A DNA stretch of 64,000 nucleotides, from positions 3,100,001-3,164,000 of the forward strand of contig OZ251225.1 of the NCBI GenBank assembly GCA_965240325.2, given 5' to 3'. A model generated the notes under the pieces. That model ran no database searches. It was not told where the DNA came from and saw only the letters and a list, made by a program, of their open reading frames with translations. The stretch is from Rebecca billardiae RCC1528. Lineage: Eukaryota; Protista; Haptophyta. A program made the position numbers and the translations under genes. This document shows positions 1 to 59,681 of this stretch, piece by piece (the first letter of the stretch is position 1; every line of letters starts with the position of its first letter).

Positions 1-2
1 CG

Positions 3-1196
3 GCGCTGCAGGCGTGGCGGCGCGACTTCAAGGCGCGCGAGGGCGGGCGCGAGCCGCGCATCTGGTTCGACCGCGCGTGCATCGACCAGGAGGACGTGAG
101 CGCCGACCTGCCCTTCCTCCCGGTCTACCTCGCCGGCTGCCACCAGCTGCTGATCCTGTGCGGCACAACGTACCTGCAGCGCATGTGGTGCGTGGTCGAG
201 CTGCTCGTGTTCGAGCAGATGGGCGGCGACGACGTGCAGATGTACCTGCTGCCCGGGCTGGAGGCGGAGGCGCTGGGCAGCTTCGAGCTGGCGGGCTGCC
301 GCTGCGCGCTGCAGTCCGACTTTGAGCGGCTGCAGTCGGCGATTGAGAGCGCAGTCGGCTCCAAGGAGGACTTCAACCAGCTCACGCGCGCGCTGCTCGC
401 GCGCTCGCGCACGGCGACGCTGACTCCGGCCGAGCTCGCGGCGGGCGCTTCGGATCAGCACGACGGGAGCTCGCGGCGCAGCAGCTCGAAGGCGCCCGTC
501 TTCTCCGGCAACCGCCGCGCCTCGGCGCTGCGCGGCCGCTCGCCGGTCAAGTCGGCCAACCCCGGGCCCAGCGCGATCGAGGCAGGCACGGCCGCGGAGC
601 CGAGCGGCGACTCGGCCGCGCTCGCCACGCCGCGCCGCCGGCTGCGCGACAAGCACCTCACCGCGATCGTGCTCGTCGTCGCGATGGCCCTCGGCTTCGC
701 CGGAGGCGCGATCGGCGGCGCCGCGGGCTCGAACGCGGCGTGCGCAGAGTGCGAGCGCATGGTCGGCGCGCCGCCGCCGCGCGACAAGGCCCACGCCGTC
801 CGGCTCGGCGAGCGCCGCTTCACCGTGTGGCGCACGCCGGCCACGTGGCGCGAGGCTCGCGCCGAGTGCGCGCGCAGGGGCGGCGGGCTCGCCACGGTCA
901 GCTCGGACGCGCAGCGCGCCGCCGTGCGCTGCCTGCTTTTCGACGACGTGCGGCCATCGTGGATCGGGCTCTCCACGCGCGGCGACCCGGAGGACGAAGC
1001 GACGTGGCGCTGGACGGACGGCAGCCGGGCCGTGGCGCACAACAGCTGGAAGGCGGATCAGCCGCGCGAGCCCGACGAGGGCGGCGAGCCCGCCGCGGGC
1101 GACCCGAGCGCGTGCGCGAGCACGCTCGCCGGCTGGTGGGCCGCGGAGTGGTGCCAGCACGAGCGCAGCTACGTCTGCGAGTTCGCTATCGACTGA
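3..1196 (+). CDS. Partial (5' end outside window) TIR-like domain + single TM helix + C-type lectin domain protein
   Basis: Frame open from base 3: ALQAWRRDF..IWFDRACIDQ..LPVYLAGC..LLIL.GTTYLQRMWCVVEL (TIR-like, WCxxE); hydrophobic LTAIVLVVAMALGFAGGAIG (~658-726); CTLD motifs TWREARAEC..LATV..WIGL..WRWTDG..W..QP..C..W....C......VCE; stop at 1196. Confidence 0.8.
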   Translation, partial: ALQAWRRDFKAREGGREPRIWFDRACIDQEDVSADLPFLPVYLAGCHQLLILCGTTYLQRMWCVVELLVFEQMGGDDVQMYLLPGLEAEALGSFELAGCRCALQSDFERLQSAIESAVGSKEDFNQLTRALLARSRTATLTPAELAAGASDQHDGSSRRSSSKAPVFSGNRRASALRGRSPVKSANPGPSAIEAGTAAEPSGDSAALATPRRRLRDKHLTAIVLVVAMALGFAGGAIGGAAGSNAACAECERMVGAPPPRDKAHAVRLGERRFTVWRTPATWREARAECARRGGGLATVSSDAQRAAVRCLLFDDVRPSWIGLSTRGDPEDEATWRWTDGSRAVAHNSWKADQPREPDEGGEPAAGDPSACASTLAGWWAAEWCQHERSYVCEFAID

Positions 1197-1628: not shown

Positions 1629-4600
1629 GACCGAGACACCTAGTGTCTTGACACCACTCCACTGTGGACAGCCCGCCTCCAGAGGGGGCGGGGGTATGCC
1701 ATTGCCAACAGCATACGAGCCCAACACTGTGGGGTGGTCCCAGGTACAAGCAGTGTACGGCCTTGCAATTCAAGATCACCGAGTTTGAGCCGAGTCGGCA
1801 GAAGGGGCACCCCCTAGGGTGCCCCAGTGTGGGCAGAGGGCCAGCCACTAGCCGATCCCTGCGCGGGGAAGGGAACTGAGGGGACTGTCATCGAGCCCAG
1901 TAGCTGGGCAGGGGTCTGGGCCACTGGCCCTGGCAGCGAGGCGCCTGTATTTCACTCGTGCAGCTATGGAGGCAGAGGGGGTCATGTCAGACATGTGTGC
2001 TACATCGGGCATCAAGTCCGGGCGTGGGCCGCTGTAGGAAGCAAGCAAAGTGGTGGCGATGGCTAATACGCCTGGGGAGGTGTCGTTCGCTCGCCTCTTC
2101 CTGCTGCGCTGTGCAGGGGGTAGTGTGCTCCGCTGCGGCACATTTGCCTGGCGGGGTGGGCAGTGTCGTTTGGGCGGGGGGCTGTCTTGCCGAGCTTGAC
2201 TAGAAGGAGGCAGCCTGCGCCTGGGGGCTGCCAGTGGCCTGGCAGAGCCAGCAGGTGGCTGTGTGGCCGCTGTCCAGTGACTGACTGTGTAAGGTCGCTA
2301 TGAGCTCAGTTACCAGTGTGACTGCCAGCAGCCGGGTCTGCCTCCATCTCAGGGCCCCCATGTGTCAACACATTGTCCGGCGGACCCACATTGCTGCGAG
2401 CCAGCGGGGTGGCATATTGGAGCGGCCATGCCACAAGAGGTGTGGCAGGCTGCAGAGGCCACGCAATCACCATAGGGAGGGGGCGAGCACGCTGAAGGGG
2501 CCACGCCTGCGAGAGTAGCTGGGGGCGCACGTGGTGGTGACCGCGCGCTATGGGCTGGTGCAGGTTGGCCTGCCCCGCGCCTGCCTGCCAGCCCTGGCCA
2601 GCCTGGGCAGGGGGTTGCTGCTGGATGACAGGTGGTCCTTGCAACTGATTATATGCATGGCAATCGCCCCTCCTGGGCCTGCCTGTGCCTGTGGGAGTGG
2701 GGGCTGCCCCCCTGGGCCGTGCCCAGGCGGCGGCCGAAGCTCCCTGGCATGTCGAAGGAGACGTCCTGCCTTCGACAGCTGGGAGTCCACGTCCTTGCGG
2801 GCCTGCATGATGCCTAGCCCTGCCTTCAGTAAGGCCACGTGCATGGTCCTGCCGAGATGCACGTTGCCCCCCACAGTGGTCTTCAGTGTGCTGGGCACCC
2901 TGCCCATGAGAGCAGCCCCAGAGCACACGTGACGTGCCAAGTTCCATGCTGCAGCCTGTCCCTGCATGAATGGCTCAATTACATGCGATACGCTTCTGGC
3001 AGCAGCCATTCGGTAGGCATCGACCTCAGGGCACTCAGAGAAGAGGTGGTGCTCAGTATCTGGCGCTGGATGTAGCAGAGGAGCATGATCGCAGAGGGGG
3101 CAGGCATCGCTAAATGCCGCCCCCGACTGGAATCGCACAGAGAGCAACGTCGGGTCTCGCAGGGCAGCAGGCTGCAGGAACTCATATCCGTGGTGGAGTA
3201 TGTAGTAGGCAGGCACAGTGTTGGCCTGCCAGGTCCGTAGTACGCCAGTGGAGGCCTCTGGCCACACGCCGGTCCATTCACCCACCAAGTCACAGCTGGA
3301 CTTGGTGGCTTGCAGGTGGGTTGCCCTTTGTGATAGCACACTGTCATACACAAGGGGCTTGATTCGGCCTGCCACTGGCTCTCCATCGGCCAGCTGTACC
3401 ATTGCATGGGAACCCGCATTTGGGTGGCCACCTCTCTTGTGAGTCACACAGGGGGTTGTGGGGTCAGAGCAGCAGAGCTTGGCCCCCGCATCGCTGCATG
3501 CGTTGAGCAGGGTTTTGGGGTTCATCCCTGCTTGGAGCAAAGCAGCCACACTGTGTTGGCTGACAGTGCAGTGCTGGTCCCCCGGGTTGTGTGTGAGGCT
3601 GAGGTGTCGCGCAGCAGCATCGTCAGCAGAGTGCACCTTGACATGCTCAAATGAAGTGGTGCTGCCATGCCGCAAGCGGCGCCAGCCCACCAGGCTCATG
3701 ACCCTGGCGATGTATGGGGCGTAAGCGTGGTGCCCCTGCCGAAGCCGTCGGTCCCAGGGGTCGTTTTGCCACATTTCGGCGGCCTTTACCATTTCCTGCA
3801 GGTCAGTGCACACCAGCAGGTTGGCGGTGGGGTCTATCTGCACCAATGCATCTGTGATGGCCATGAATTCGGCTGGGCCTGGTGCCTGGTGCCCCGCGAA
3901 CTTGGAGCAATACACATGCACAGGGGCAGTGTAATTGTTGCCGTTGAAGAAGGAAAAGGCACACGCGGCCTGCCCGTTCTCTGCATCGAATGAGCCATCA
4001 GTGGCCACCATTAGCATGCCAGGTACAGGAAGTGCAGGCAGATGGCGGGGATTGGGTGGATCACAGACAGTACGCTTGGCAGCAGGCACGTGCCCCAGGT
4101 ACCTGTAGTAGCTCTGGTCGGTCAGGACTGCCCTCAGCATATCCCTCACTGCCAGTATCACCGCCGGGCGGGACCTATGTGGCAGTGAGGACAGCTCCGC
4201 ATAGAACGCAGTGGAGACCATCTGTCTTGGTGGCTGTTGCATGAGCACACCTAGCAACACGTGCTGGGTACCGTCCACCAGTGAGTGCTCGATCCGGCTG
4301 AGCATCTCTCCGTTCGCGTCAGGAAGGCCGTGTGGCGCCAAGCAGGGGAGGGCAGCTGCCCCTGGCATTGCGGCGAGTCTTGTATATGCCCTGTGGGTCC
4401 GGTTTGTGGCCAGCATCCCGAGCCCGGGGGCCAGCTGCTGCATCAGCTTGCTGCCGAGATTCACTTCGGATGGGAGCAGTGCCCACCCCATGCGTCGTAT
4501 AGAATTTCTCCCGGTGACGATGGTGGAGGCAAATGTAGAGGCGCCGCGTACGCGCGCCCGTGCTGGGTGCTCTACTGATTGCAGGGCACCCATGGCTGCC

Positions 4601-7600
4601 ATGGACGTGCGCGCACATAGCCCACGTGGGTCATCTGCCAGGAAGTGGTAGTACGCGTGTGCCTGGACACTCTCCAGGTGCGCATGTAGATTGATGAGGC
4701 CTAGGCCCAGGAACTGGGGAGGAAAGCACGCTGCCTCGTATGCGATGCGCCCTGGCAGGGCAGCACTCCTGACCACTGGCTCCACCATGAGGCTTTGCAG
4801 CTGGTTGAGTCTGCCCCTGGACATGCCAACCACCTCGTAGAAGTAGAATAATATCGACGTGACATCCCACACAGTAAGCAGCTTTTTGGTCTCGGTGCAG
4901 CAGTCAGCTGCCTGCACCCGCGCGGCGGCTTTGGCCACTCTGGCCTTGAGACTGGCGAACATCCTGTCAGTTGCCAGATGAATGTTGTGTCAGACTGGGC
5001 ACCAGTCCTCGGAGACACCGTTCCACAGGAGTCGCGGGTAAGTTTCCGCATCTACCCGCACGCCACCGGCGGAGGCACGATCCGACACTATCTCGGCCAG
5101 TCCGGAGCCCCAAACCCCGTGGGTTTGGGGCTGCCCGACCCATCATCCGATGATGTGACCCCGTCCGCCTGCCCCTTCGGGGCCGGTCCTTAGCCCGCCT
5201 GGTCGCTTCCGGTGGACCTATCGCCCACACGCGCGGTAGGGAGCACCCACGCTTCTTCTTCAGTCTAACATGGTACCGGAGTCAGCAACGAGACGCGCTC
5301 GTTACCGGACCCGACCTCGCTGGCGCAAGGAACGCGCTCGCGCGCATCGCGCATTGCGAGCTCGCGAGACGATTCACATCCAAGTCGGATGGTCCAAGGC
5401 AGGCTAGCCCAACCGCGGCAGCCTTCAAGGAGGAGGTGCTGACGTACCTCATTCCGACGACATTCGCGTCGTCATCGTGCGCCGAGTCGCACGCCCTGCT
5501 CAGATGCTGGAGGAGTCTCGACACCAAGTCGATTGACTTCATGAATGCAGCCCTCGACCGCCAAGATGGCCGAGCAGCTTGCAAGGAGGAGATGAGGCGC
5601 GATCTACGCGTTCACTAGGCGACAGCGGATACGATCACGTCGATCGACACCGCGCGCCGCTCGATCATCTCCGCGCTCGCTATGTGCAGCTTCTTCGTGA
5701 CACGCGGTTGCGAGGCAGCGTCATTCTGCGGCCGAAGCCGACACAAGGTTCTACGCGTGAGACCAGTCCATGTCCCATTGCACCAGCCCACACGCGGTGG
5801 TGCACCGTCGCCGTCGACGCGACCCATCGAGGAGGAGCAGGCAGGTGGATCTCGGTAAGTCCACAGCAGCTGGCACGACCACACGATCACTCGATCAACT
5901 GCCTGGGGCACCACGCCCCCGTCGACGCCCAAGCCGAGCCCGAGCCTGGTCAGCCAGCTCGGCAGGCGTCCATTCACTGGAGTACGACTGCTCGGACGGA
6001 TTCGCGAGCAACTCCAGACGTCCCTCGATCGCTGCTGCGATTCGCAGCTTCCGGACAGCTTGGCAGCTAGACAGTCGGGCACGCACACGCACGCTCGCCT
6101 TACGGCTTACGCCCCCACTCACACTTACGCACACGCGCACGCGCACTCAGGCACCGCACCTCGCTGTGGTCGGTGAGGAGGAGTGTCAGACTGGGCACCA
6201 GTCCTCGGAGACACCGTTCCACAGGAGTCGCGGGTAAGTTTCCGCATCTACCCGCACGCCACCGGCGGAGGCACGATCCGACACTATCTCGGCCAGTCCG
6301 GAGCCCCAAACCCCGTGGGTTTGGGGCTGCCCGACCCATCATCCGATGATGTGACCCGTCCGCCTGCCCCTTCGGGGCCGGTCCTTAGCCCGCCTGGTCG
6401 CTTCCGGTGGACCTATCGCCCACACGCGCGGTAGGGAGCACCCACGCTTCTTCTTCAGTCTAACATGTTGGTCACCACCCCTGCATACGTGAAGTATTCT
6501 CCATCCTGCAACGTGTCTATGGGAGCAGCTTGTCCAGTTGCCCTGTGTTGATGACCTGTATTGGGTCCACCTGTGCGTGCCCAGGGGGCACATACACTGC
6601 CACCTTGGATTTGGGGTAGTTGGGCTCCATATCATAGTACCACAAAAAGTCGATGAGGTCCTGCATCATGGCTGTGATGTCTGCTCTGCTGTGCGCGTAC
6701 AAATTGATGTCGTCCATGATAGCAGTGGCCACCACTGTCACCTGCCCTGCAGCAGCGTCCGCGTCGTCTGAGCTGCATTTGGACTGTACATGGTACCCTC
6801 CATGCCTGCTCTTCAGGTACCTGAGGAACATGTTGATGAACAGGCAGAACTTAGTGGAGCTAGCAGGGTCACCTTGCTTCGTGCCACACCGTAAGCGTAC
6901 ACTATCAGTGGGCCAGTATGGCGTCCTCACCACCACATCATGCCCCTCTCCTAAGGAGCGCATGAGGGTATAAAACATGGCTGGGTACCCATGGCTGCGG
7001 AAGCCATCCTCAATGCCTTGGTATGGCACCGTGTCGAAGGCCTTTTGAATGTCCATCAGTGCACAAAACAGCGTGCGCCGGGAACTGTGTGCATCGGCCA
7101 CCACGTTGGCAAAGACAGCGACTTGCTGTACCACTTGCCCACCCTCTCTGCTGGCAGCCTGTTCCGGCTCGATTAGCCTGAGCCTGTCGGACGCAGCTTG
7201 CATGGCGTTGTTTTGGTGTCTTGCCATGATTTTGTACACCACACTGTTGAGTGTTATGCCCCTGTAATTCCCGAGCACGTGCATATCCCCGTGCTTGTGT
7301 AGTGAGACAACCTCCCCTTGCTGGAGTCCGTCCAGAAGAGTCCCTGTCGAGTACATGACTGCGCAGAGATTAGATATAATAGTGGCGATCGGGCCAGGGT
7401 GCCCTGTGACCTGTCCCCTGTCCCCTGGCTGCCCCCTGCTGGGCACCAGTCTGCTGTGCAGCGTGCTGCCTGTGTGTGCGCGTGCCGCTTGGCAGTACAG
7501 GCTCGTCGCGCTCGGCATGGTGGCCTTCCAAGAGCTTGAGTACATTGTACTGTATGCCATCTGGACCAGGCGCCGAGTTGCCTCCCACCTCAGATGTGAT

Positions 7601-8335
7601 GATGTGCCGTATTTGCGCGGGGGTGGGTGGCGTTCCGAGGGCGGTGACATATGCGTCCCCCTGATCAGTGTGCCATGCGGCCCTAATGTCGTGCCACATG
7701 TGACCTCCAGCGTGCCAAGGAGGCCTGCCCCCTGGCCGAGTGTATTGTCGCTCCAGAAGGCCCTGGTAGTGCCCCCTGTACTCCGATTTCACATCGTCAA
7801 CGCTGGTGGCCAGTGCCCCATCGCTCCTTCTGACGATGGTCGGCAGTGTGATGGGGTCCTTGGCATACACCATGACACGCAATTTATGCGAGTTCTTTTT
7901 GGTCTCAACCTTGACTTTGGCGAACCACGCCCTCTTTTGTTCCTCAGCCTGCTGCTGCCACACAGCCTTCACTTCCGCGCGGCTCGTCCTGCATTGCTGC
8001 TGCACGATTTGTCTCCAGCGCTGGTGGGACAGAAATGGCCCTACCGGCACCTGTCCGTGAGGCCCCATTGCCACTTGTGTCCAGTGCTGGGACTGTGCAG
8101 CTCCAGTGCCCCAGGTCCGCTCGTACCTGCGCATTGCTCTGCGTACTGCTGGACCAGCTGGCAGCCCAGCAGCTGCTCTGTTAGCCAGAATATCGCCTGC
8201 ATGCAGCGCAGCAGAAGCAGCATCTGCTTTGGATTTGTGTTGACCCGCTGCTGCGCCCGCTGTGGCTGGTCGGATCTTCAGGGGCGTGTCTGGTTGTCCG
8301 TCAACTCGGCCAGCCGCTTGGACAGATGCAGATGA
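1531..8335 (-). mobile_element. Non-LTR retrotransposon (LINE), 5'-truncated and frameshifted; RT, RNase H and C-terminal Zn-binding motif; interrupted by an LTR element at 4988-6465
   Basis: Minus-strand segments: SAPGPDGI (7370-8134 frame); NYRGITL, DIQKAFDTV, GTKQGDPASS, IMDD (6517-7650 frame); YFTYAGV thumb motif; RNase H ATDGS..AEF..CTD..HVKVH..D and CPLC..EHHLFSEC (2548-4962 frame). No endonuclease domain visible; 5' boundary approximate. Confidence 0.9.
4988..6465 (+). mobile_element. Non-autonomous LTR retroelement (TRIM-like), 1478 bp
   Basis: LTRs 4988-5270 and 6184-6465 (TG...CA; one C indel noticed between them); 5-bp TSD TGTTG at 4983-4987 and 6466-6470; PBS TGGTACCGGAG at 5271; purine tract GGTGAGGAGGAG just before 6184; no pol ORF in the 913-bp interior. 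Confidence 0.95.
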
Positions 8336-10999: not shown

Positions 11000-12298
11000 T
11001 CAGCAGCGCGATCGATGCGCGGGACTGTGAACGCGCGCGTTCACACGGCGAGCGATGTCCCCAACCGCCTCGTCCGACACGACCCCGCGCTGCTGCCGCA
11101 CCGTGCGCTCGTCCTTGGCGTACTCGGCTGTCACTTCGACAGCGCCCTCATCGCCAAAGGCGAAGACGAAAGCGTGGCGCTTGCCCCATCCATCGGCGTA
11201 CATGCGCGGCTCGTCGTACGCCTCCTCGCACGGGTCCGTGTGCACCCAGCGCCCCGATCCGGGCAGGCGCACCTCGCACCAGCAGTGGTCCGCCCAATCA
11301 GCCACCCAGCGCGCCTCGAACCCAGCGCCCCGCAGGAAAAGCAGCCACGCAAATGAGTACTCGCCGCACCGGCCGCGGCGCGCGGCGAGGATCGGCCGGA
11401 TCGAGTTGAAGCGCACGAAGCGCGAGACGCGGCCACAGCCGCTCGGTCGCTCCTCGCCCCGCTCAGCCCCATCCGCGTCCTCCGCCTGATCGGCGTCTGT
11501 GCTGCACAGGTGGAGCTCAGCCGCGGACGCGGCGCCGAGCCAGCGCTCCAGCCGGCGCGGGCCAATCGCGCCGAGGATGTGCACGTGCTCTGGCTGCTCG
11601 GAGCCGCGGCTCGGGGTGGCACACTGCGAGTGCAGGCACCCCCTGTGGTAGTAGAGGAAGCGTTGGCGGAACCACGCCAGCAGTGCGCGCAGGTGCGCCT
11701 CAGCTCGCGCGTCGGCCTGTGGGGCAGCGAGCTCTGGTTCAACCGCGAGAGTGTTGTCCGCCGTCGGCGGCGGCGCGTCGAAGCGGCGCATGTAGCGTCG
11801 CGCGGCGCGGACGCCGCGCGCGTCGCGCCGGATGCTCAGCTGCCTGCGCGCATGCCCCTCGAGCTCGCGCTCGAACCGCTCGGCGGCGGACTCCGGCGCA
11901 CGCAGCGCCGCCATGGCGTCCTTGTTTGCGACCAGCAGCCGCTGATGGCGCCATGCGCGCTGGAGATGGGCCCGCGAGTCGGCGTCGTTCTCGATGGTCA
12001 CGTTGCGGAGCCGCGCCTGGTAAAACGCGGGGGACCCACCGCGCCTCCACGCGAGGAAGCGGCAGAAATCCTCCTCGTCCGCGCCGAGCGCGTACAGCGG
12101 CGGGCGGCCGCGCGCGTCGTACCGCAGCGCGGTGGTGCGCACGCGATCGCCCGCAGCCGCCGCGCGGACGAGGCCCGATCGCGGGCGCCGTAAGATACCT
12201 CTCGCGAACCCACCGAAGCCAAGCCCCACGCGAGCCCCCGCCACCGCGCCCACGATGCAAAGCAAGCACGCGAGGCGGCATGAAGGCGGCGATGCCAT
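11000..12298 (-). CDS. PNG1: Peptide:N-glycanase (PNG1/NGLY1-like transglutaminase fold) with N-terminal signal peptide
   Basis: RRGRCGEY, RWVADWADHCWCEV, RWVHTDPCE..YDEP.MY..GWGK (Cys-His-Asp triad); start MASPPSCRLACLLCIVGAVAG chosen over upstream in-frame starts that overlap the neighbouring gene or promoter. Confidence 0.85.
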   Translation of the reverse strand: MASPPSCRLACLLCIVGAVAGARVGLGFGGFARGILRRPRSGLVRAAAAGDRVRTTALRYDARGRPPLYALGADEEDFCRFLAWRRGGSPAFYQARLRNVTIENDADSRAHLQRAWRHQRLLVANKDAMAALRAPESAAERFERELEGHARRQLSIRRDARGVRAARRYMRRFDAPPPTADNTLAVEPELAAPQADARAEAHLRALLAWFRQRFLYYHRGCLHSQCATPSRGSEQPEHVHILGAIGPRRLERWLGAASAAELHLCSTDADQAEDADGAERGEERPSGCGRVSRFVRFNSIRPILAARRGRCGEYSFAWLLFLRGAGFEARWVADWADHCWCEVRLPGSGRWVHTDPCEEAYDEPRMYADGWGKRHAFVFAFGDEGAVEVTAEYAKDERTVRQQRGVVSDEAVGDIARRVNARVHSPAHRSRC

Positions 12299-12463
12299 CG
12301 CTGCCCCGTTCGCCCACCGGCGGGCTGGTCCGCCGCCAGCACTGGCAGGTAACTTTGGAGCCGGCATCGTGGCCGTCCCGCGCCCACGTCGAATCCGCGT
12401 GGTGGGCTGTTGGCACGCGCGCGAGCGGACGTCTGGGCGCACGCCCACCGTGGTGCTGTGGGC

Positions 12464-13306
12464 ATGACTTTGGGTGACGGCGCGCGTACAAAGAAGAGGA
12501 AGGCGCGCACGGATGCCGCGGACCCGGCGCCCACCACCCCTGGGGGTGAGTCGGACGTTGCTGCCCAGCCGGCGCGCGGCGCGGCCGATCCCGCCGCCGA
12601 CGGCCGACTGCTCTACATCGGCGGTCTGCCGTTCAACTACGAGGAAGCCGACGTGCGCGCTGCCTTTGGCGAGTGCGGCGAGATCAGCCACGTGCACTGC
12701 ATGCGCTTCCCCGATACGGGCAAGTTCCGGGGGATTGCGCTCGTGACGTTTGCAGACGCGGAGGCGGCCGCGCGCGCCAAGGCGTATGATGGCACGGAGT
12801 GGGAGGGGCGGTTCCTCGTGATCAAGCCGGGGCGCGCGCTGCCCAAGGGCGCGGGCAAGACCGCGGAGCGCGACGCCGACAGCGCGCGCGGCGTCCGGCC
12901 GGACGAGCGCCCCAAGCCGCAGGGCTCGACCACGGCGTACTGCGGCAACCTCAGCTTTGACGCGGACGAGGCGGCGCTGAGACACTTCTTCGCCGACTGC
13001 CCGATCGCCGGCGTGCGCATGCCGACGGACAAGGCGACGGGGCGGCACCGCGGCATCGCGTTCGTCGAGTTCGAGGACGACGCGGCGCTCGAGCGCGCGA
13101 TGGGCCGCAACGGCGAGCTGCTGCTCGGGCGCGAGGTGGCGATGCACTACTCCACCACGACCGGGCCCAGCGCCAAGCAGCGCGCGGCGGCGGCGGCGGC
13201 GGCACGGGCAGCACCGCAGGCTGGGGCGGCCGCGGCAGATGGTGGCGCTGGCCGACGCCGGAAAGGCGGGGTCGGAGCCAAGCAACGGCGTCAAGCGGCC
13301 AGGTGA
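12464..13306 (+). CDS. Two-RRM RNA-binding protein (nucleolar Nop13/nucleolin-like)
   Basis: LYIGGL..RGIALVTF and AYCGNL..RGIAFVEF RNP2/RNP1 motifs; KKRK NLS-like N-terminus; 3' end less certain. Confidence 0.85.
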   Translation: MTLGDGARTKKRKARTDAADPAPTTPGGESDVAAQPARGAADPAADGRLLYIGGLPFNYEEADVRAAFGECGEISHVHCMRFPDTGKFRGIALVTFADAEAAARAKAYDGTEWEGRFLVIKPGRALPKGAGKTAERDADSARGVRPDERPKPQGSTTAYCGNLSFDADEAALRHFFADCPIAGVRMPTDKATGRHRGIAFVEFEDDAALERAMGRNGELLLGREVAMHYSTTTGPSAKQRAAAAAAARAAPQAGAAAADGGAGRRRKGGVGAKQRRQAAR

Positions 13307-14107
13307 GGCCGCGGCCCGTGCCGATCCCGTACTCCCCGGCATCAGACGTACGTCGGGACGTTCCCCCGATGCGGCGATGTCTGATGTCTGCTGATGCCGA
13401 CCGGGGACGCACGCACTGTCGAGCTCGAACGCACGACGAGACAGTCGTCACTCGTCAGCAGTGACTCACCATCGGTCGCAGTGGGCGCCTCGGCGGAAGC
13501 CCTACCCTGGCCAGCCCCGCTTCTGTTATCATAGGTGGGTTTGTGGCTAGTATCAGTGGAGCGCCGCCACTATGAACCAGGACTCCGCAGCGGCTCGTCC
13601 TCATTAATACAGTACCCCCATACATGAGTAAAGTCGTTGGCGGATTGATATTGATAGTCATTATGTACGTTGATACAGTTACACGACGCGCTAATCTTAT
13701 CATATCAGTCGCTCATCATGATGAGGTCATACTTGCCCTACTGCGCACCCCATTATAGTATTATTCAGACCGTACCCACCTCCTGCCGGAAGTTACGTTT
13801 GAGGACCCCTCCGCCCTCCCCGTACAATCCCTACTTCGCTCGCGATTCAGCTGGATTCGCCGAGCGTTGGGTACGTACGCACCGGGCTCCTGTCGTCTCG
13901 ACGGGCTCTCGACCACAACCGGGTCCGGGAGCCGCGCCGGCTTCACCCCTTTGAGCACCCGAGTGAGCCAAAAGAGGCACAGGCATAAACGCACGCCGCC
14001 CCTGTCCACCCCACCGAGGGCGAGGGAGAGCCCCACCGACTCCGCGGGCGACAGCGGACTGCTCACGGGCAGCCGCGGCCCTCGGCACATCGTCGAGCGC
14101 GCACGCC

Positions 14108-16385: not shown

Positions 16386-17651
16386 TCAGTCAAGGTCCTC
16401 GAGCGACGCCTCCACGCGCGCGTCGTCGAGCTGCCCCTCGCCCTCCGCCGCGGCCGGCTCGGGCTTTGCGTCCGCCTCGGCGAGCGCGGCCTCGACCTCC
16501 TCCGCCGCGTCGTCCAGATCCTCGCCGAAGATGTCCGCCTCGTCCGCGTCCTCGAAGCGGGCCTGCGCGCCGTTGGTCGCGGCGCCCTCGGCCTTCTCGG
16601 CCTTCTCGCGCTCCTTCTCCTGCAGCTTGGCCCGCGTCCGCTCCTGCACGTACACCTGCTCGTCCACAGCGGGGAACTCGCCACGCGCCGCGCCCTCGGC
16701 ACTCCACTCGCGCAGGTAGCTGCGGCGCACGCGCGCGCAGGGCGGGGCGGGTGGCAGCGGGTGGGCGGCGCGAGGCAGCGGCGTCTGCGGGGGCCGCGCG
16801 GCACGCGGCGCGTACCGCTCGATGTGCTTGAACTTGCGCTCCACGGCGTATTCGAGCGCCGTCTTGCCGGCAGCAGCGGCTGCCTCCGCCGCGTCGGCGT
16901 GCGCGTCGGCGTGCTCCCCGACTGCTGCGTCGCCCGCGGGGGCGGGTGCATCGGCGCTCGCGCCGGCGTGGAGCGGTGCGTCGGTGGGCGGCGTGTCCGT
17001 CAGCTCCGGATCCGCGCCGAGCTTCATCAGCGCGTCCACCGCGCGCGGGCGGTTCCCGAGCACGGCGACCATGAGCGCCGTGCGACCCCACACGTCACGA
17101 GCGTCCAGCGAGCCCGCGTGCGCGTCAACAAGCGCGCGGACGACGCCCGCGTCGCCCGTGCCGCTCGCGCAGTGCGTGAGCGCCGTTCGTGCGTGCACAT
17201 CGCGAGCGGACGCGTCCGCGCCGAGCACGAGCAGCGCCTTCACGGTGTGCATGTGCCCCTTGCTCGCAGCGAGCATGAGGGGAGTCACGCCGCCGACGTC
17301 GGCCGTGTCCGCGGCAGCACCGCGCTCGGCGAGGAGCTGGATGGCGGGCGTACGGCCGGAGAAGGCCGCGTACGATACCGCCGTCCAGCCCAGGTGCGTG
17401 CGCGCGCCCACGTCGCACCCCTCCGTGAGCAGCTGGCGGACGAGATCGACGTGGCCGGCCTCGGCGGCCGTCATGAGCGCGGTGCGGCCGTTGGCGTCCA
17501 CGGCGCCGACGGGTGTGCCCTTCGCCTGCGCCGCGCGGAGGCCTTCGACCGATCCGCTCGCGACGGCGCGGAAGAGCTCGCGGACGTCCTCGGTCGACGG
17601 CTCACCCGTCGCTGCGGCCTCGCCCTGCGCGCCCAACTGCATCACTGCCAT
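16386..17651 (-). CDS. Ankyrin repeat protein with acidic C-terminus; intron 16720-16815
   Basis: GRTALMTAA..GH, GWTAVSYAA..G, GVTPLMLAA.KGH, GRTALMVAV, GKTALEYA. Confidence 0.9.
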   Translation of the reverse strand: MAVMQLGAQGEAAATGEPSTEDVRELFRAVASGSVEGLRAAQAKGTPVGAVDANGRTALMTAAEAGHVDLVRQLLTEGCDVGARTHLGWTAVSYAAFSGRTPAIQLLAERGAAADTADVGGVTPLMLAASKGHMHTVKALLVLGADASARDVHARTALTHCASGTGDAGVVRALVDAHAGSLDARDVWGRTALMVAVLGNRPRAVDALMKLGADPELTDTPPTDAPLHAGASADAPAPAGDAAVGEHADAHADAAEAAAAAGKTALEYAVERKFKHIERYAPRAARPPQTPLPRAAHPLPPAPPCARVRRSYLREWSAEGAARGEFPAVDEQVYVQERTRAKLQEKEREKAEKAEGAATNGAQARFEDADEADIFGEDLDDAAEEVEAALAEADAKPEPAAAEGEGQLDDARVEASLEDLD

Positions 17652-17851
17652 CTTGCCAACCGGCGACGGTTAGAGATGTGGGGCGGTTGCCCGCGCGACT
17701 GGTTCCGGACGACGCCCGCCCGGCCGGCCTTTTCCGGATCCAGAAGCGGAAGAAAAAAAACGATCAAAATCAGTTTCACATCATCATCATCATCGTTACA
17801 CGGCCCCCACTGACAACGTTTCACGATCTCTCGCGGTCGCGCGCAGCACCC

Positions 17852-20475
17852 ATGGAGCCCAGGCTGCGCGCGCTCGTGGCGGACGCGACTCGGCCCGAGC
17901 ACGCGGACCCGACGCAGCCGCTCGCCGCTGCGCTGCGCGAAGTGGACGTGGCTCAAGACCTCGGCCACACCAACCTCGACTCGCTCTCGCCCGAGGCGCT
18001 CCTCCTCTGCGCCGAGGCCGCGATCCAGGTGCGCGGACGGTGCCGCGCCCCCGCCGCGCCCGCGCTCGTGCGCCGGCCGCGCTCGTCGCTGAGCGCGCGG
18101 CCCGCCGCCTCGCGCGCGCCTCGCGCCGCCGCTGCTTCCCCGCGCGCACAGCTCGAGCGCTTCGAGGAGGCCGACCCGTACCTGCGGCGCTTCCTCCTCT
18201 CGAAGCCCGCGCCCAACCAGTTTCTTGTGCGCGCGTACTATGGCATGGCGCTGGTGGTGCACTCGCGCGTGCGGCACCTCAAGGCGGCGGAGCTGGTGAA
18301 CGGCGTGCTCGGCGCGCTGGAGTGGGTCCTGCGCGGCCTCGCCCTCGCGCGCACGCGCCCCGGCTACCGCTTCCTCGTGTACAACGGCTCGGTACATTTG
18401 TATCGCGTCGGGCGTGTGCTGCTGCGCGCCAGCCGCCGAGCGTCGCTGATCGGCGCGCTCAAGGCGGCGACGGCGGCGCTGGCGGAGGCGGAGGAGCCGG
18501 ACACGGCGTGGCGACTGCAGCTCGCCATCCAGCTCGTGTACGCCCACGCCGACGCGGACGACGCCGCCTCCGCCCTCGCCGCCGTGAGCGCCGCCGCGCC
18601 GCTCGCGGACGGTCTCGGCGCGGAGGCGGTGGAGCTGCTGTGGCGAGTGCAGCTGCACCTCGGCCGGGGCGACGTGGCGCGGCTGCGCAAGATGGCGGAG
18701 GAGAAGGCAGCCGCACCGCGGCTCAAGGCCCTCGCGCTCTGCGCCGCGCTGCGCGCCTCCGCCGCCCTCGACCACGGCGGCGCGCCGCCGCCCGACACAC
18801 ACGCGCAGCTGCTCGCGATCCTGACGGAAGTCGACCCTACGCTGGCTGAGGCGGCGCGCGCGGCGGTGGAGGCGGGCGGCGAGGCGCCGAGCAACGAGGC
18901 GGTGAGCCTGGTGCGCGAGGCGCCGCTGCACGAGGACCTCGTCGCCGCGGCGGGCGAGGTCGCCGCCGAGCTCGGCCAGCTCGACCTCGCGCAGGCGTGC
19001 GCGGAGCGGGTGATCCTCGGCGAGCGGCTCGGCACGCGCGTGCGAGCGCAGCTGGTGCGCGAGGCTGCGCGCGTGCGCCGCCTCGACGCGCACGAGGAGG
19101 GCACGGTGGCGGAGTCGAAGGTGTACACGCGGCGGATGGTGGGCGTGCGCATCGAGGCGCTCCGCCGCCTCGAGGAGGCGCTCAGCTCCGCGCAGCACGT
19201 CGGCGACGCCGATCTCATCACCGACGTAGTCCTGCTGATCCACCGGACTTTGCTGCCGCTGCTGCAGCCGGAGTTGCTGCCGGCGGTGCACCGCGCGCTG
19301 GCGCTGGGCGCGGCGGCGCTCGAGCAGATCGACTCGCCGCTCTCGGAGCTGCGCGCGCAGCTGCACGCCGAGCTCGCGCGCTGCGAGGTGCGCGCCGAGT
19401 TCCTGCACAAGGCGACGGCGCAGGTGTCGAAGGGTCTCGCGCACGACGTCACCGACGCGGCGGCGGGCGCGCGGCTCGAGCGCACGCTGCGGCCGCTCGC
19501 CGAGCGGCTGGCGCTGCGCACGGACGTGTGGGGCGAGCACGACGAGCCCGAGGTGCAGGCGTACCTGCGCTTCGAGCGCGCGCGCTCCACGCCCGAGCCG
19601 CGGCTGCGCCGCCAGGCCCTCGCCGAGTCTGCGCAGCTGCTCGCGCGCGCGCCGCTGCCCGCGGGCGCGCCGGCCGACGCGGTGCGCGAGCGAGCGCTTC
19701 TCTGGGGCGAGATGATCGCCGCGGCGTGGAAGGAGCGCATGGGGGAGCTGGTGCACGAGGTGGCGCCGCGGCTGCTCGAGCTCGAGTTCAGCCCGCACGA
19801 CGAGCCGCACGTCACGCGCGTCCAGGCCGAGGCGCACCTCGCAGTCGCCGAGGCGCACGTGCACGCGCTCGCGCGCGCCGGCCGCGCGCCGTGCTACCGG
19901 CCGCGGCCGGCGGGCGGCGGCGCGTCCGCGGACAAGGCGGGCGGCGAGGGGGGCGAGGGCGAGGCGGCGGCGGGCGCGGGCGCGGGCGGCGGCGCGGCGC
20001 CGACCGATTCGTCCCAGCCCGCGCCCGCCGACGACCTGCCGCCGCACCCGCCGCCGTCGTGGTTCGTGCGCGGGCCGGCCGCGGACGCGCCTCCGAGCGC
20101 TGCGGACGTTGACGAGCCAACTGCCACGGCCGAGCTCGTGGCGCTCGAGCACCTGCTGCGCGGGATGCGGCGCGCGCGGCTGCTGGGCGAGGAGTGGCTG
20201 CTGCTCAACGGGTGCGTGCACCTGTGGAACCACCACGTCCTCGCGTACGGCGCGCGCACCGGCGGCGCGCTCCCCCTCGAGCTGTACGACGCGACGCGCG
20301 AGGCTGTGCGGCACGTGCGCGCGCTGTGCAGCGCGCCGCAAAGCGTCGCTCGCACCGACCTGCCGTCCCTCCAGCTGGTGTGCGCGCTGGCGAACGCGCT
20401 GGCGCGGGCGCAGCTCGCGCTCGCGAAGGGCGGGGGCGACAAGCGCCCGCCGCCGGTCGACGACGAGCACGCGTA

Positions 20476-20513
<38 letters not shown>

Positions 20514-22588
20514 AGCAGGAGGCAGCGGCCAAGGCCGCGCAGGAGGCGGCCGCGGCCGCGGCGACAAGCGGAGCGGGCGCGGGCGCGGGCGCGGCGCCCG
20601 GCGGCGGCAAGGGCAAGAAGGGCGGCGCGAAGGGCTCGAGCGCGGCCAAGCCGGCGGCCGAGGCGCCCAAGGGCAAGAAGCCGCCGCCCGCCGCCGCCGC
20701 CGCCGCCTCCTCCGCCCCCGCGCCCGTCCCCGGCGGCGAGCTGAGCGCGGCCGCCGACGCTTGCCGCTGGGCGGCCGAAGTCGGCGCTGGCCGGCCGGCG
20801 GCGTATGCAGATGCAGTGCGCACGCTCGTGCGCGTGCAGATCGCGCAGGGGAGCAAGGAGCCGTGGGCGGTGGGCTCGGCGGACCCCGAGGCGAAGGCGA
20901 TCGCGCTGATCGACGCGATGGCGCTCGGCGCGCGCTCCGACCTCGCCGGCCTCGAGGCGGTCGAAGCGCTGCTCCGAACGGCGGGCGCGGCGGCGGGCGG
21001 CGGCGCCGACGGCGAAGCAGTCGGCGGCGGCGGCGGCAAGGGCGGCGGCGGCGGCAAGGGCGGTGCCGTCGCCGCGGTGCCGGCCGCCGCGCGGGCGCAG
21101 TCCGAGCTCGAGCCGCGGCACACGGGCGTCGCGCTGCACGCGCAGCTCTGGGCGCAGCTTGCCGAGCGCGCGCTCGCCCTCGGGCGCATGCCGGTCGTCG
21201 TGCGCGCGTGCGAGGCGGCGCTCGCGCTGCTGCGCGCGCGGATGGCGGCGCCGCCGTCCGCGCCGCCGATCGCGCCGTCCGAGTGGCGCTGGTTCGCGCT
21301 CGTCGAGTGGCTGCACGGCGCGGCGCTCGGCGCGCTCATCCAGGACGGCCAGCCGCGCACGCTCTCCGAGCAGCTCCGGCAGCAGGCGGCCTCGCACTAC
21401 GCCAAGGCAGTTGAGTATGCGCACGCGGCGCAGCTGCCCAAGCTGGTGCTCGCCGCGGCGCGGCGGTTTTGGGGGCAGACGCTGCCGCGCGCGCGCACGC
21501 CCGCCGCGCGCGCGCTCGCCGTGCCCGACGTGCGCCGCGTGCTCGGCGTGCTGCGCCGCTCGTCCGAGGGCGAGGCGCGCGGCGCCGCGCCCACGCCCGC
21601 GCCCGGCACGACGCCCAAGCGCGGCCGAGGCGCCGCGGCCGTTGCTTCCTCGCCTTCGCCGCTTGGCGCGCGCGGCGGCGGCGCCACGCCCGCGTCCGCG
21701 CGGCTCACGCCCGCGCGCACGCCCGGGCGCACGCCCGGCCGCAACACGCCGGGCGGCACCGTCGGCGGCACGCCCGGCGGCGTGGGCGGCGGCGGGGGGC
21801 CGGACGACGGCTCGGACTCGGACTCGGACGACGTCTCCGCCTCTGCGCAGCTGCAGCAGCAGCTGTACAGCCTCGTTCTCCTCTCGCTCTCCGAGCAGGC
21901 GCTGTGGGCGGACGGGCTGGCCGCGCTGGACGAGGCGTTCAGCGCGCTGCCGCCCTCGTGCCACGAGCCGCTGTGGGAGGCGCGCGTCACGCTGATGGTG
22001 AAGGGCGGGCGCGGGCGGCTCGTGGCGGGCGAGATGGCGCGCATCAAGGACGCCAAGCCCGACGTGCGCGCGGCCGTCTGGCTAGCGCTCGCGCGCGCGG
22101 CGCCGTCGCGCGCGGAGACGCTCACGGCGTTCAGGCGAGCGCTCGGCGCGCTGGCGGGCGAGCCGCTGGCGCAGGCGAACGTGTACGTCGAGTTCGGCGA
22201 GTGGCTCTTCGCGTCGGGCTTCCCGACGAAGGACGCGGAGGACCAGATGCTCGCGGCGGTCGACCTGCTGATGGACCTGGACGACGAGGCGGACGAGGGC
22301 GGCGCCGACGACGGCGGCGGCAGCGTGGCCGGCGGCGACGTCATGTCGCAGGTGATGTCCGATCTGGGGGCGGCGTCGGCCATCGACCGAGCGTCGTACG
22401 TGTCGGGCGCGGGGCGCGGCGGCGGCGGGCGCTCGGTCGCGAGCGGCTCGGTGGTCTCCGGCTTCTCCGCCGCGGGCGTGGGCAGCCCGCAGAGCGGCGC
22501 GCGCGGCGGGCGGCGCGCGGCCGCCGGCCTCGCCGCCACCTCCCTCGCCTCGGGCAGCATGGCTGGCAGCGTGGTCGGAAGTCGAGCG

Positions 22589-22623
<35 letters not shown>

Positions 22624-59584: not shown

Positions 59585-59681
59585 CGTCGCGGCCGGCCGC
59601 AGGGCGGAGGCGACGCTTGCACAGTGCCTCCGGCCACCGGCTGCTGGCACACGATGGCCGCCCGGCCTCCACTTTTTTAGA

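What the first reader, a model, noticed from the sequence alone, without database searches (positions are those of the whole stretch)
3..1196. TIR-like domain - TM - C-type lectin: candidate glycan-sensing immune receptor with topology reversed relative to Toll-like receptors
Seen: one uninterrupted frame carries a TIR-like block (WFDRACIDQ..LPVYLAGC..TYLQRMWCVVEL), a low-complexity basic linker ending RRRLRDKH, one hydrophobic helix and a complete C-type lectin domain (WIGL, four Cys, QP/EPD loop). Established: the Glu in WCxxE is the catalytic residue of NAD+-cleaving TIR domains (SARM1, plant TNLs, bacterial Thoeris), which are activated by oligomerisation; CTLD receptors such as Dectin-1 are type II membrane proteins. 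Inference: the positive-inside rule places the TIR in the cytosol and the lectin outside, so clustering on a bacterial, viral or prey surface glycan could switch on NADase signalling in a unicellular alga. I do not know of a characterised receptor with this architecture. The N-terminus lies outside the window.
Basis: partly seen in the sequence, partly recalled or inferred. Interest (0 to 1): 0.82.

Follow-up and report, generated by a model that had tools for sequence, protein, structure and literature searches.

The report
Algal membrane TIR/HET protein with lectin-like domain
This is the real second exon of an algal gene for a seven-helix membrane protein with an immune or cell-death type (TIR/HET-like) domain inside the cell and a C-type lectin-like domain outside, so it looks like a surface receptor, but neither sugar binding nor NAD+ cleavage has been shown.

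Summary
Window 3..1196 (+) is one uninterrupted, strongly coding frame (GC3 0.96). It carries a TIR-superfamily domain, a basic linker, one membrane helix and a Pfam-significant C-type lectin-like domain (CTLD).

It is exon 2 of a two-exon gene. Upstream DNA from a public contig adds exon 1, with about six membrane helices and the first TIR strand, and a 253-nt GT..AG intron. The spliced protein has 785 aa.

The protein is therefore polytopic, not type II. The TIR/HET-like domain sits in the cytosolic loop between helix 6 and helix 7, and the CTLD is the extracellular C-terminus.

The fold is TIR-like: Z is 9.7 for a relative's complete domain, and the best matches are TIR domains (all 12 with Z >= 8). 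The sequence lies between Pfam TIR_2 and HET. The putative catalytic Glu is invariant in 49 relatives.

This copy's CTLD lacks the canonical Ca2+/sugar site (QPR for EPN, WAA for WND), so glycan sensing is weakly supported.

Four metagenomic relatives, each under 50% identical to the others, share the full architecture. Hundreds have only the multi-TM plus TIR/HET core.

Multi-TM TIR genes induced by virus infection are published for Gephyrocapsa (PMC12489294). I found no paper on the CTLD version. The scan already noted paralogues elsewhere in this genome.

The parts
1..1196 (+). Window part of exon 2 of the gene. The reading frame starts at nt 3 and the stop codon is at 1194-1196. The exon begins 28 nt upstream of the window, at L001 3229, after a 253-nt GT..AG intron.
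   Evidence: GC3 is 0.956 and GC drops to 0.52 after the stop codon.
3..437 (+). TIR/HET-like domain, missing only its first beta-strand, which is encoded in exon 1. In the spliced protein this is aa 389-533.
   Evidence: AF2 model with pLDDT 84.5. Plant TIR domains fill the top 16 Foldseek matches, E 0.018-0.16. The top 11 VIA matches are all TIR, Z 7.9-5.8. A family profile hits only TIR chains in the PDB. 20 of 49 relatives hit TIR_2 and 17 of 49 hit HET.
63..89 (+). WFDRACIDQ motif (a HET-type 'WxDxxCIxQ' block, at the beta-B strand and BB-loop region). W, D and C are invariant and Q nearly invariant in 49 relatives.
186..200 (+). WCVVE motif. The Glu codon at 198-200 (E66 of the window frame, E454 of the spliced protein) is the putative catalytic Glu.
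   Evidence: Invariant in 49 relatives. Aligned on WCLNEL of the SNC1 TIR domain.
438..656 (+). Low-complexity Ser/Ala/Arg-rich cytosolic linker ending in RRRLRDKH (633-656).
   Evidence: GC3 is 0.936, which marks it as coding.
657..725 (+). Seventh transmembrane helix (LTAIVLVVAMALGFAGGAIGGAA).
   Evidence: Kyte-Doolittle mean 2.36 over 19 residues. Five K/R lie in the 15 residues before it and one in the 15 after.
837..1184 (+). C-type lectin-like domain, long-loop form. The EPN/QPD position reads QPR (1059-1067) and the WND position reads WAA (1137-1145).
   Evidence: Pfam PF00059 E=2.1e-12. PDB matches to mannose-receptor-family CTLDs and tetranectin. Alignment with family CTLDs.

Best explanation
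The stretch is exon 2 of an intact two-exon gene of a very GC-rich, haptophyte-type alga. The gene encodes a 785-aa polytopic membrane protein. Its parts, in order, are:
- a cytosolic N-terminus;
- about six membrane helices of no known family;
- a cytosolic TIR-superfamily domain of a type between Pfam TIR_2 and fungal HET, with the conserved Glu of NAD+-cleaving TIRs;
- a disordered basic linker;
- a seventh helix;
- an extracellular C-type lectin-like domain.

Shown here: the gene model, the domain identities, the TIR-like fold, and conservation of the whole architecture in other organisms.

Inferred from the positive-inside rule and the disulfide-rich CTLD: the N-in, C-out topology.

Inferred only: the protein acts as a surface receptor. 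A ligand bound outside, by the CTLD and/or the 6TM module, would cluster the protein. The cytosolic TIR/HET-like domains would then self-associate and cleave NAD+ or make a nucleotide signal, leading to a defence or cell-death response. This parallels TIR domains in plants, bacteria and SARM1, and HET domains in fungi.

The ligand is probably not a simple sugar bound the canonical Ca2+ way, because that site is degenerate in this copy.

My odds:
- architecture and TIR-superfamily assignment: about 0.9;
- receptor-like role in biotic or cell-cell recognition: about 0.5;
- NAD+-consuming catalysis: about 0.4;
- glycan as the ligand: about 0.25.
For: Frame and domains:
- The frame is uninterrupted and holds a significant CTLD.

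Gene model:
- Logan contigs L001 and L002 supply the upstream DNA.
- The GT..AG intron of 253 nt joins ...VDAFVSHS to WHDDPEAKW..., which restores the family's nearly invariant 'DAFxSHSWxD..KW' block.
- The spliced protein aligns end to end with P0024 (E 5e-81), P0039 (E 3e-71) and P0057 (E 9e-45).
- GC3 is 0.92-0.96 in both exons and in the linker.

Topology:
- The membrane helices and the K/R distribution fit an N-in, 6TM, TIR-in, TM7, CTLD-out model.

TIR-like fold and family:
- The window part gives Foldseek matches to plant TIRs, E 0.018-0.16, and VIA Z 7.9 with the top 11 all TIR.
- The complete domain of relative P0039 gives Foldseek RUN1 TIR E 2.8e-4 and VIA Z 9.7, with all 12 chains at Z >= 8 being TIR.
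- Pfam hits among 49 relatives: TIR_2 in 20 (best E 2.4e-6) and HET in 17 (best E 2.7e-3).
- The Glu is invariant and aligned to the plant TIR WCxxEL motif.

Distribution:
- The architecture recurs in P0023, P0024, P0039 and P0057.
- P0057 is an uninterrupted 722-aa ORF on three contigs.

Context from papers:
- HET is a remote TIR relative with the conserved Glu (PMC9153377, PMC10197012).
- G. huxleyi multi-TM TIR genes are expressed during virus infection (PMC12489294).
- Protist TIRs are active NADases (bioRxiv 10.64898/2026.04.20.719644).
Against: - There is no expression data for this gene; no RNA run was listed.
- The window protein itself reaches no Pfam TIR or HET threshold. Its only hit is HET at 13.6 bits against a cut-off of 22.5.
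- The structural scores are middling (TM-score 0.35-0.49, Z below 10), and the window model lacks its first strand.
- No solved HET structure appeared among the matches, so TIR and HET cannot be told apart by fold here.
- At most one of the five Ca2+-site-2 positions of the CTLD keeps a compatible residue (Q, as in QPD lectins): QPR replaces EPN, WAA replaces WND, and no Glu sits two residues before the Cys.
- The fourth membrane helix is weak (Kyte-Doolittle below 1.5). With only five upstream helices the topology would conflict with the positive-inside pattern.
- Animal TIRs with the same fold act as scaffolds only.
Confidence: 0.6

Rival explanations
1. HET-type self/non-self or mating recognition. 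The domain works like fungal HET domains, as a cell-death trigger on contact with incompatible cells. The CTLD would mediate cell-cell or gamete recognition rather than pathogen sensing.
For: - The WxDxxCIxQ block is the only part that Pfam recognises in the window protein, and it matches HET.
- 17 of 49 relatives give weak HET hits.
- One Atlas cluster among the nearest is named 'Heterokaryon incompatibility domain-containing protein'.
- The family is large and varied, like fungal HET families (PMC10197012).
- The CTLD lacks the sugar site, as in many protein-binding CTLDs.
Against: - No HET hit reaches Pfam's threshold.
- More relatives hit TIR_2 than HET, and with better E-values.
- Nothing is known about allorecognition in these algae.
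- The biochemical mechanism of HET is itself unknown (PMC10197012), so this is a rival in biological role rather than in chemistry.
Confidence: 0.15
2. Scaffold-only TIR. The domain does not cleave NAD+. Like animal TLR and IL-1R TIRs, it would recruit other TIR/HET-like proteins, of which the genome has many, upon ligand binding.
For: - Structural matches include non-catalytic animal TIRs at the top: IL-18Rbeta Z 9.7 and MyD88 Z 9.6.
- The genome and related plankton carry many soluble or multi-TM proteins with the same domain that could be partners.
Against: - The Glu aligned with the catalytic Glu is invariant in all 49 aligned relatives, together with W, D, C, R, W and C around the predicted pocket. 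This argues for chemistry rather than surface contacts only.
- Protist TIRs tested so far are active NADases (bioRxiv 10.64898/2026.04.20.719644).
Confidence: 0.15
3. Membrane transport or channel protein with accessory domains. The conserved 6TM module would be the working part (a channel or transporter), regulated by the TIR/HET-like loop. The CTLD would be an anchoring or matrix-binding add-on.
For: - The 6TM plus TIR/HET core is what most relatives share. Only a few carry a CTLD.
- The 6TM module is conserved in sequence across relatives (phmmer with exon 1).
Against: - The 6TM module matches no Pfam family and no named Atlas cluster, so nothing points to transport.
- The most conserved columns of the family are in the TIR/HET-like domain.
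Confidence: 0.07
4. Artefact: a chance ORF in GC-rich DNA, or two genes wrongly read as one.
For: - GC-rich DNA gives many long spurious ORFs on both strands here.
- No RNA data were listed.
Against: - Both domains are significant.
- GC3 is 0.94-0.96 throughout, including the linker, and GC collapses right after the stop codon.
- The protein is colinear with four full-length relatives.
- One relative is an uninterrupted ORF on three independent contigs.
Confidence: 0.03

Closest known systems
Multi-transmembrane and extracellular-region TIR-domain proteins of Gephyrocapsa (Emiliania) huxleyi, expressed during EhV infection and in resistant cells (New Phytol 2025, PMC12489294)
   Same: - Haptophyte proteins with N-terminal multiple transmembrane helices or an ectodomain, followed by an intracellular TIR domain.
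- The glutamate is conserved.
- The structures resemble plant RPS4 and SARM1 TIRs.
   Different: - That paper reports no NBS or LRR domains in these TIR genes and does not mention a lectin domain.
- Here a seventh helix and a CTLD follow the TIR-like domain, so the TIR sits in an internal loop.
- I did not test whether the published genes are orthologues of this family.
Fungal HET domain (Pfam PF06985), for example in HET-E/D/R NLRs and many HET-only proteins
   Same: - The block pattern looks shared. By my recollection of HET it is 'SHSW', 'WxDxxCIxQ' and 'RxWxxxE'. Only the middle block is matched by the Pfam model here.
- HET is a remote relative of TIR with a conserved Glu.
- Both are large, variable gene families.
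   Different: - The score is below Pfam's threshold (13.6 against 22.5 bits).
- This protein is membrane-embedded, whereas fungal HET proteins are described as cytosolic NLR or single-domain proteins.
- The organism is an alga.
Plant TIR domains of TNL immune receptors (RPS4, RPP1, RUN1, SNC1) and SARM1/TIR-1, which are NAD+-cleaving TIRs
   Same: - They are the best structural matches.
- The WCxxE(L) motif aligns on the catalytic Glu.
- They are activated by oligomerisation (established for those proteins).
   Different: - Identity is only 10-19%.
- There is no NB-ARC/LRR or ARM/SAM context here.
- Activity is untested.
Toll-like receptors
   Same: An outside binding domain, a membrane span and an inside TIR-fold domain in one polypeptide.
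   Different: - No LRR ectodomain.
- Seven helices rather than one.
- The ectodomain is C-terminal rather than N-terminal.
- The TIR type is HET-like.
Animal C-type lectin receptors (Dectin-1, DC-SIGN, the mannose receptor family)
   Same: A CTLD with WIGL, four core cysteines and the long loop, exposed at the C-terminal, extracellular end. The closest sequences are mannose-receptor-family CTLDs and tetranectin.
   Different: - Not single-pass type II.
- I did not look for a hemITAM motif.
- The canonical EPN/QPD plus WND Ca2+ site is absent in this copy.
- Signalling would go through a fused TIR/HET-like domain.

Membership tests
C-type lectin-like domain (Pfam PF00059 Lectin_C) | Profile score above Pfam's gathering threshold | tested here: met
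   48.2 bits against 22.6, E 2.1e-12, covering model positions 2-107 of 107.
C-type lectin-like domain (Pfam PF00059 Lectin_C) | WIGL motif and the four core cysteines (C1-C4, C2-C3) | tested here: met
   SWIGL is present. Cys 677, 759, 772 and 780 of the spliced protein align with the core Cys of PDB CTLDs.
Ca2+-dependent carbohydrate-binding C-type lectins | Ca2+ site 2: an EPN or QPD motif, a Glu before the Cys, and WND | tested here: not met
   The EPN/QPD position reads QPR, the WND position reads WAA, and there is no Glu at -2 of the Cys (HMMER alignments; family alignment). Relatives differ: P0023 has EPN, and P0024 and P0118 have QPD.
TIR domain (Pfam TIR PF01582 / TIR_2 PF13676) | Profile score above the gathering threshold | tested here: not met
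   The window protein has no TIR hit at E <= 10. 20 of 49 relatives hit TIR_2 (best E 2.4e-6). The one relative whose score was printed gave 24.8 bits against 28.
TIR domain (fold level) | Flavodoxin-like beta-alpha fold superposable on solved TIR domains | tested here: met
   Window part: VIA Z 7.9 (rmsd 4.4, 128 aligned) with the top 11 all TIR. Complete domain of relative P0039: Z 9.7 (rmsd 4.3, 130 aligned), all 12 chains with Z >= 8 are TIR, and Foldseek gives E 2.8e-4. The scores are moderate, not high.
NAD+-cleaving TIR enzymes | Catalytic Glu at the WCxxE/SxWCxxEL position | tested here: met
   The Glu (E66 of the window frame) is invariant in 49 relatives. The profile alignment places it on the Glu of SNC1 'WCLNEL'. 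That this Glu is catalytic in plant TIRs rests on the literature (PMC9153377).
NAD+-cleaving TIR enzymes | NAD+ hydrolase or cyclase activity | not testable with these tools
   This needs a biochemical assay.
HET domain (Pfam PF06985) | Profile score above the gathering threshold | tested here: not met
   13.6 bits against 22.5. Only model positions 46-62 match (the WxDxxCIxQ block). 17 of 49 relatives give weak hits, best E 2.7e-3.
Toll-like receptors | LRR ectodomain, single membrane span, C-terminal cytosolic TIR | tested here: not met
   No LRR hit. About seven helices, and the ectodomain is C-terminal.
Type II C-type lectin receptors (Dectin-1 type) | Single-pass type II topology with a short cytosolic N-terminal tail | tested here: not met
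   Exon 1 adds about six further helices and a 63-aa N-terminus.

The most novel reading that the evidence does not exclude
A one-protein pattern-recognition pathway in marine phytoplankton. An extracellular CTLD, or another ectodomain in sister proteins, would directly switch on a membrane-embedded TIR/HET-type NADase. Contact with a virus, bacterium, grazer or foreign cell would then be turned into NAD+-derived signalling or cell death without adaptors. It would be one member of a large modular receptor family with exchangeable ectodomains, on a 6TM plus TIR/HET chassis.
Probability: 0.25. Interest if true: 0.85.

Novelty: new variant of a known kind. Interest (0 to 1): 0.6.

Why it matters
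Virus-driven death and acquired resistance of haptophyte blooms affect ocean carbon and sulfur cycling, yet no algal receptor that senses infection is known. TIR-domain genes with membrane helices have just been linked, by expression only, to the Gephyrocapsa response to its virus.

This gene shows a concrete, conserved design in which such a TIR/HET-like domain is wired between a 6TM module and an outward-facing binding domain. That gives a testable candidate for surface sensing coupled to NAD+ chemistry.

It also bears on the evolutionary link between fungal HET and TIR domains, because this algal family scores against both Pfam models.

Tried and rejected
- RNA evidence: the look-up of sequencing runs listed no RNA run. 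Read laying was therefore not used, and the single-transcript test rests on homologues and the coding signature only.
- The word-index protein search found only the window's own ORF and CTLD-less relatives. I therefore ran the exhaustive HMMER search.
- The spliced protein could not be handed to structure prediction, because only unchanged sequences are allowed. I folded the window part, which lacks strand A, and the complete domain of the closest same-architecture relative, P0039, instead.
- The 6TM module has no Pfam family and no named Atlas cluster.
- A quick maximum-likelihood tree of 107 TIR/HET-like domains was too poorly resolved to say whether the C-terminal CTLD was added once. One origin is not excluded. 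The N-terminal-CTLD form (P0118) groups elsewhere with SH-aLRT 91. The careful search did not finish.
- No second copy of the domain exists in this window (tblastn).
- Reading 'EPD' rather than 'QPR' as the EPN-equivalent is rejected. The printed HMMER alignments to the IgY-receptor (FcRY), DEC-205 and Endo180 CTLDs, and the usual W+4 spacing, place QPR there.
- Chance ORF is rejected.
- Literature searches for a CTLD plus TIR combination in protists or animals found none described. The library is incomplete.
Full report
**1. The observation**

Window 3..1196 on the + strand translates without a stop into 397 residues followed by TAG/TGA-type termination at 1194-1196.

- Pfam finds a full-length C-type lectin domain at residues 279-394 (E 2.1e-12, 48.2 bits against a gathering score of 22.6).
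- The best PDB sequence matches are CTLDs of the mannose-receptor family (PLA2R, DEC-205, Endo180, the IgY receptor FcRY), tetranectin, CL-P1 and langerin.
- The N-terminal block gets no significant Pfam hit. Its only hit is a weak HET match (E 0.085, 13.6 bits) over the WFDRACIDQ block.
- The region is 72-78% G+C, where chance ORFs are common. The frame nevertheless has a strong coding signature. GC3 is 0.96 in the TIR-like part, 0.94 in the linker and 0.95 in the helix plus CTLD part, and G+C falls to 0.52 right after the stop codon.

The feature is real.

**2. The gene extends beyond the window**

The window's own 366-aa ORF is on record on two Logan contigs, which I fetched as L001 and L002. 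Window position 1 corresponds to L001 3257.

Upstream on the same strand lies an ATG-started ORF (L001 1842...) in another frame. It encodes several hydrophobic helices and ends its homologous part with ...GSVDAFVSHS. A 253-nt GT...AG interval (L001 2976-3228) separates it from WHDDPEAKW... in the window's frame.

Joining the two restores 'DAFxSHSWxD...KW', a block that is nearly invariant in 49 relatives. The spliced product has 785 aa.

It aligns end to end with three full-length relatives:

| Relative | Spliced protein range | Relative range | E-value |
|---|---|---|---|
| P0024 | 58-781 | 1-829 | 5e-81 |
| P0039 | 42-781 | 33-729 | 3e-71 |
| P0057 | 35-740 | 13-678 | 9e-45 |

Exon 1 also has GC3 of 0.92. 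L001 and L002 differ at two positions in the gene, one synonymous and one intronic. The window therefore holds exon 2, minus its first 28 nt, of an intact two-exon gene.

**3. Topology**

Hydropathy analysis of the spliced protein gives helices at 64-82, 99-117, 124-142, about 230-250, 272-292 and 607-629. There is also a weaker hydrophobic stretch around 167-190. The peak at 424-442 is the buried LPVYLAGCHQLLILCG strand of the TIR-like domain, not a membrane helix.

Lys/Arg cluster in four places:
- just before helix 1 (6 in 15 residues);
- in WREWRHRRRRRGE after the weak fourth helix;
- after helix 6;
- in RRRLRDKH before helix 7.

The loops predicted to face outside are acidic or Cys-bearing.

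The simplest model is N-terminus in, six helices, the TIR-like domain and linker in the cytosol, helix 7, and the CTLD outside. This also suits the disulfide-bonded CTLD.

This model is inference. It depends on the weak fourth helix. The TIR-like domain is an internal loop of a seven-helix protein.

**4. What the N-terminal block is**

The exhaustive HMMER search with the 397-aa product found 4051 proteins at E <= 1e-3. These include hundreds of cluster representatives that match only residues 1-~140, at 40-50% identity and E 1e-25 to 1e-34.

An alignment of 49 of them (A2) shows invariant W21, D23, C26, L39, G54, R60, W62, C63 and E66 (window-frame numbering).

Sequence evidence:
- Scanning the 49 members against Pfam gave 20 hits to TIR_2 (best E 2.4e-6), 17 to HET (best 2.7e-3), 2 to TIR and 1 to ThsB_TIR.
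- A profile of A2 against all PDB sequences returned only six weak hits (E 0.18-0.92). All are TIR domains.
- In one of those alignments 'LlvlaGetylsRLWCvvEl' lies on SNC1 'AIVIFSKNYASSTWCLNEL'. This places the invariant Glu on the plant-TIR glutamate that the literature calls functionally important or catalytic (PMC9153377).

Structural evidence:

| Model | Quality | Foldseek against PDB | VIA-align against PDB representatives |
|---|---|---|---|
| Window part, without strand A | pLDDT 84.5, pTM 0.73 | Plant TIR domains fill ranks 1-16, E 0.018-0.16 | Ranks 1-11 all TIR, Z 7.9-5.8 |
| Complete domain of P0039 (same architecture, 50% identical) | pLDDT 86.2, pTM 0.80 | RUN1 TIR at E 2.8e-4; nearly all of the top 20 are TIR | Z 9.7 (IL-18Rbeta), 9.6 (MyD88), 9.4 (SARM1); all 12 chains with Z >= 8 are TIR |

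These scores are moderate, and the tool's own note says that Z near 8 can be a common arrangement. Still, sequence profile, fold ranking and motif register all point the same way.

I conclude that this is a TIR-superfamily domain of a distinct type, with HET-like sequence blocks. No HET structure appeared among the matches, so fold cannot separate TIR from HET here. The remote homology of HET and TIR, including the glutamate, is in the literature (PMC9153377, PMC10197012).

**5. The CTLD is complete but not a canonical lectin in this copy**

In the printed HMMER alignments the EPN/QPD position is aligned with QPR. Examples are FcRY CTLD 'sqEPN', Endo180 'sdQPD' and DEC-205 'enEPN'.

The WND position reads WAA. 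No Glu sits two residues before the following Cys.

At most one of the five Ca2+-site-2 ligands is thus compatible. By comparison with the mannose-binding-protein site as I recall it, that is Gln in place of the first Glu, as in QPD lectins.

Relatives vary: P0023 has EPN, while P0024 and P0118 have QPD. The loop is acid-rich (EPDEGGEPAAGD), so non-canonical metal or ligand binding is not excluded.

**6. Distribution of the architecture**

Among the proteins retrieved, 124 carry the TIR/HET-like domain.
- Most have three to six predicted helices before the domain and nothing after it. This is the 6TM plus TIR/HET core.
- P0023, P0024, P0039 and P0057/P0160 add a helix and a Pfam-significant CTLD at the C-terminus, as here.
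- P0060, P0063 and P0097 add a C-terminal helix and other tails.
- P0118 (a 14-member cluster) has a signal-like start, an N-terminal CTLD, about seven helices and a C-terminal TIR/HET-like domain.

P0057 is an uninterrupted 722-aa ORF on three contigs of up to 8.9 kb, next to an intron-split cyclin gene. In another eukaryote, then, all modules are in one exon.

The quick tree could not resolve whether the C-terminal CTLD was gained once. The N-terminal form lies elsewhere.

On taxa: Atlas neighbours are eukaryotic, most commonly Haptophyta. A 43-48% identical relative without a CTLD is annotated in Diacronema lutheri. Others come from MMETSP and EukProt transcriptomes.

**7. How it probably works**

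Shown: a conserved polytopic protein with a TIR-superfamily domain bearing the catalytic-type Glu, and a CTLD.

Inferred: a surface receptor in which events outside the cell cluster or rearrange the protein. The cytosolic TIR/HET-like domains then associate and consume NAD+ or make a nucleotide signal.

Three published findings make this plausible:
- TIR enzymes of plants, bacteria and SARM1 are activated by oligomerisation (established knowledge).
- Protist TIRs were recently shown to be active NADases (bioRxiv 10.64898/2026.04.20.719644).
- G. huxleyi TIR genes with N-terminal helices or ectodomains are expressed early in virus infection (PMC12489294).

None of this has been tested for this family. 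The rivals are:
- a HET-like self/non-self death trigger;
- a scaffold-only TIR;
- a 6TM channel or transporter with accessory domains;
- an artefact, which is practically excluded.

**8. Novelty**

The multi-TM plus TIR core has been reported for Gephyrocapsa (PMC12489294). I found no paper describing a CTLD, or any ectodomain after a seventh helix, on such a protein, nor a CTLD plus TIR combination elsewhere. The library is incomplete.

The scan itself has already noted paralogues with the same architecture on other pieces of this genome, and this same stretch in the neighbouring window. I used those notes only as leads and re-derived the gene model and domain assignments here.

I rate it a new variant of a known kind (a TIR-domain receptor) of moderate to good interest.

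**9. Limits**

- No RNA run was listed.
- No biochemical data exist.
- The spliced protein could not be folded as such.
- The TM prediction is a simple hydropathy scan.

Noticed in passing
window 2548-7650 (- strand): A retroelement lies directly downstream of the gene. A 377-aa ORF (6517-7650) carries a reverse transcriptase domain (RVT_1, E 1.3e-18). An 804-aa ORF (2548-4962) gives a weak RNase H hit (E 8e-4, below threshold).
   Followed up: partly
window 17513-27124 (+): A 3203-aa open frame has a CFAP46 N-terminal TPR hit (E 1.7e-13), a component of the ciliary central apparatus. This fits a flagellated eukaryote. The exon structure was not examined.
   Followed up: no
window 58931-60193 (-) and 11000-13342 (-): Two further genes: an AKAP7-type 2'-5' RNA ligase-like / 2H phosphoesterase domain protein (E 1.6e-33), and a transglutaminase-core / Rad4-like protein (E 4.7e-10).
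   Followed up: no
P0118 (734 aa; 14-member cluster from ENA, Logan and JGI metagenomes): This protein has the inverse arrangement of the same modules: a signal-like start, an N-terminal CTLD with QPD and WDD (a more canonical sugar site), about seven helices and a C-terminal TIR/HET-like domain. Its TIR/HET domain groups away from the C-terminal-CTLD forms, which suggests a second, independent fusion.
   Followed up: partly
L001 1842-2975 (exon 1, outside the window): The 6TM module is conserved across relatives, together with a juxtamembrane 'AAGIAxLLxG...E.L' segment before the TIR/HET-like domain. It matches no Pfam family and no named Atlas cluster.
   Followed up: partly
L001 2976-3228: The intron is 84% G+C, richer than the exons overall, with canonical GT..AG ends. 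One of the two differences between the two Logan contigs lies in it.
   Followed up: no
L001 534-1643 (- strand, upstream of the gene): A divergently oriented 369-aa called gene with no Pfam hit on record lies about 200 nt from the start codon of this gene.
   Followed up: no
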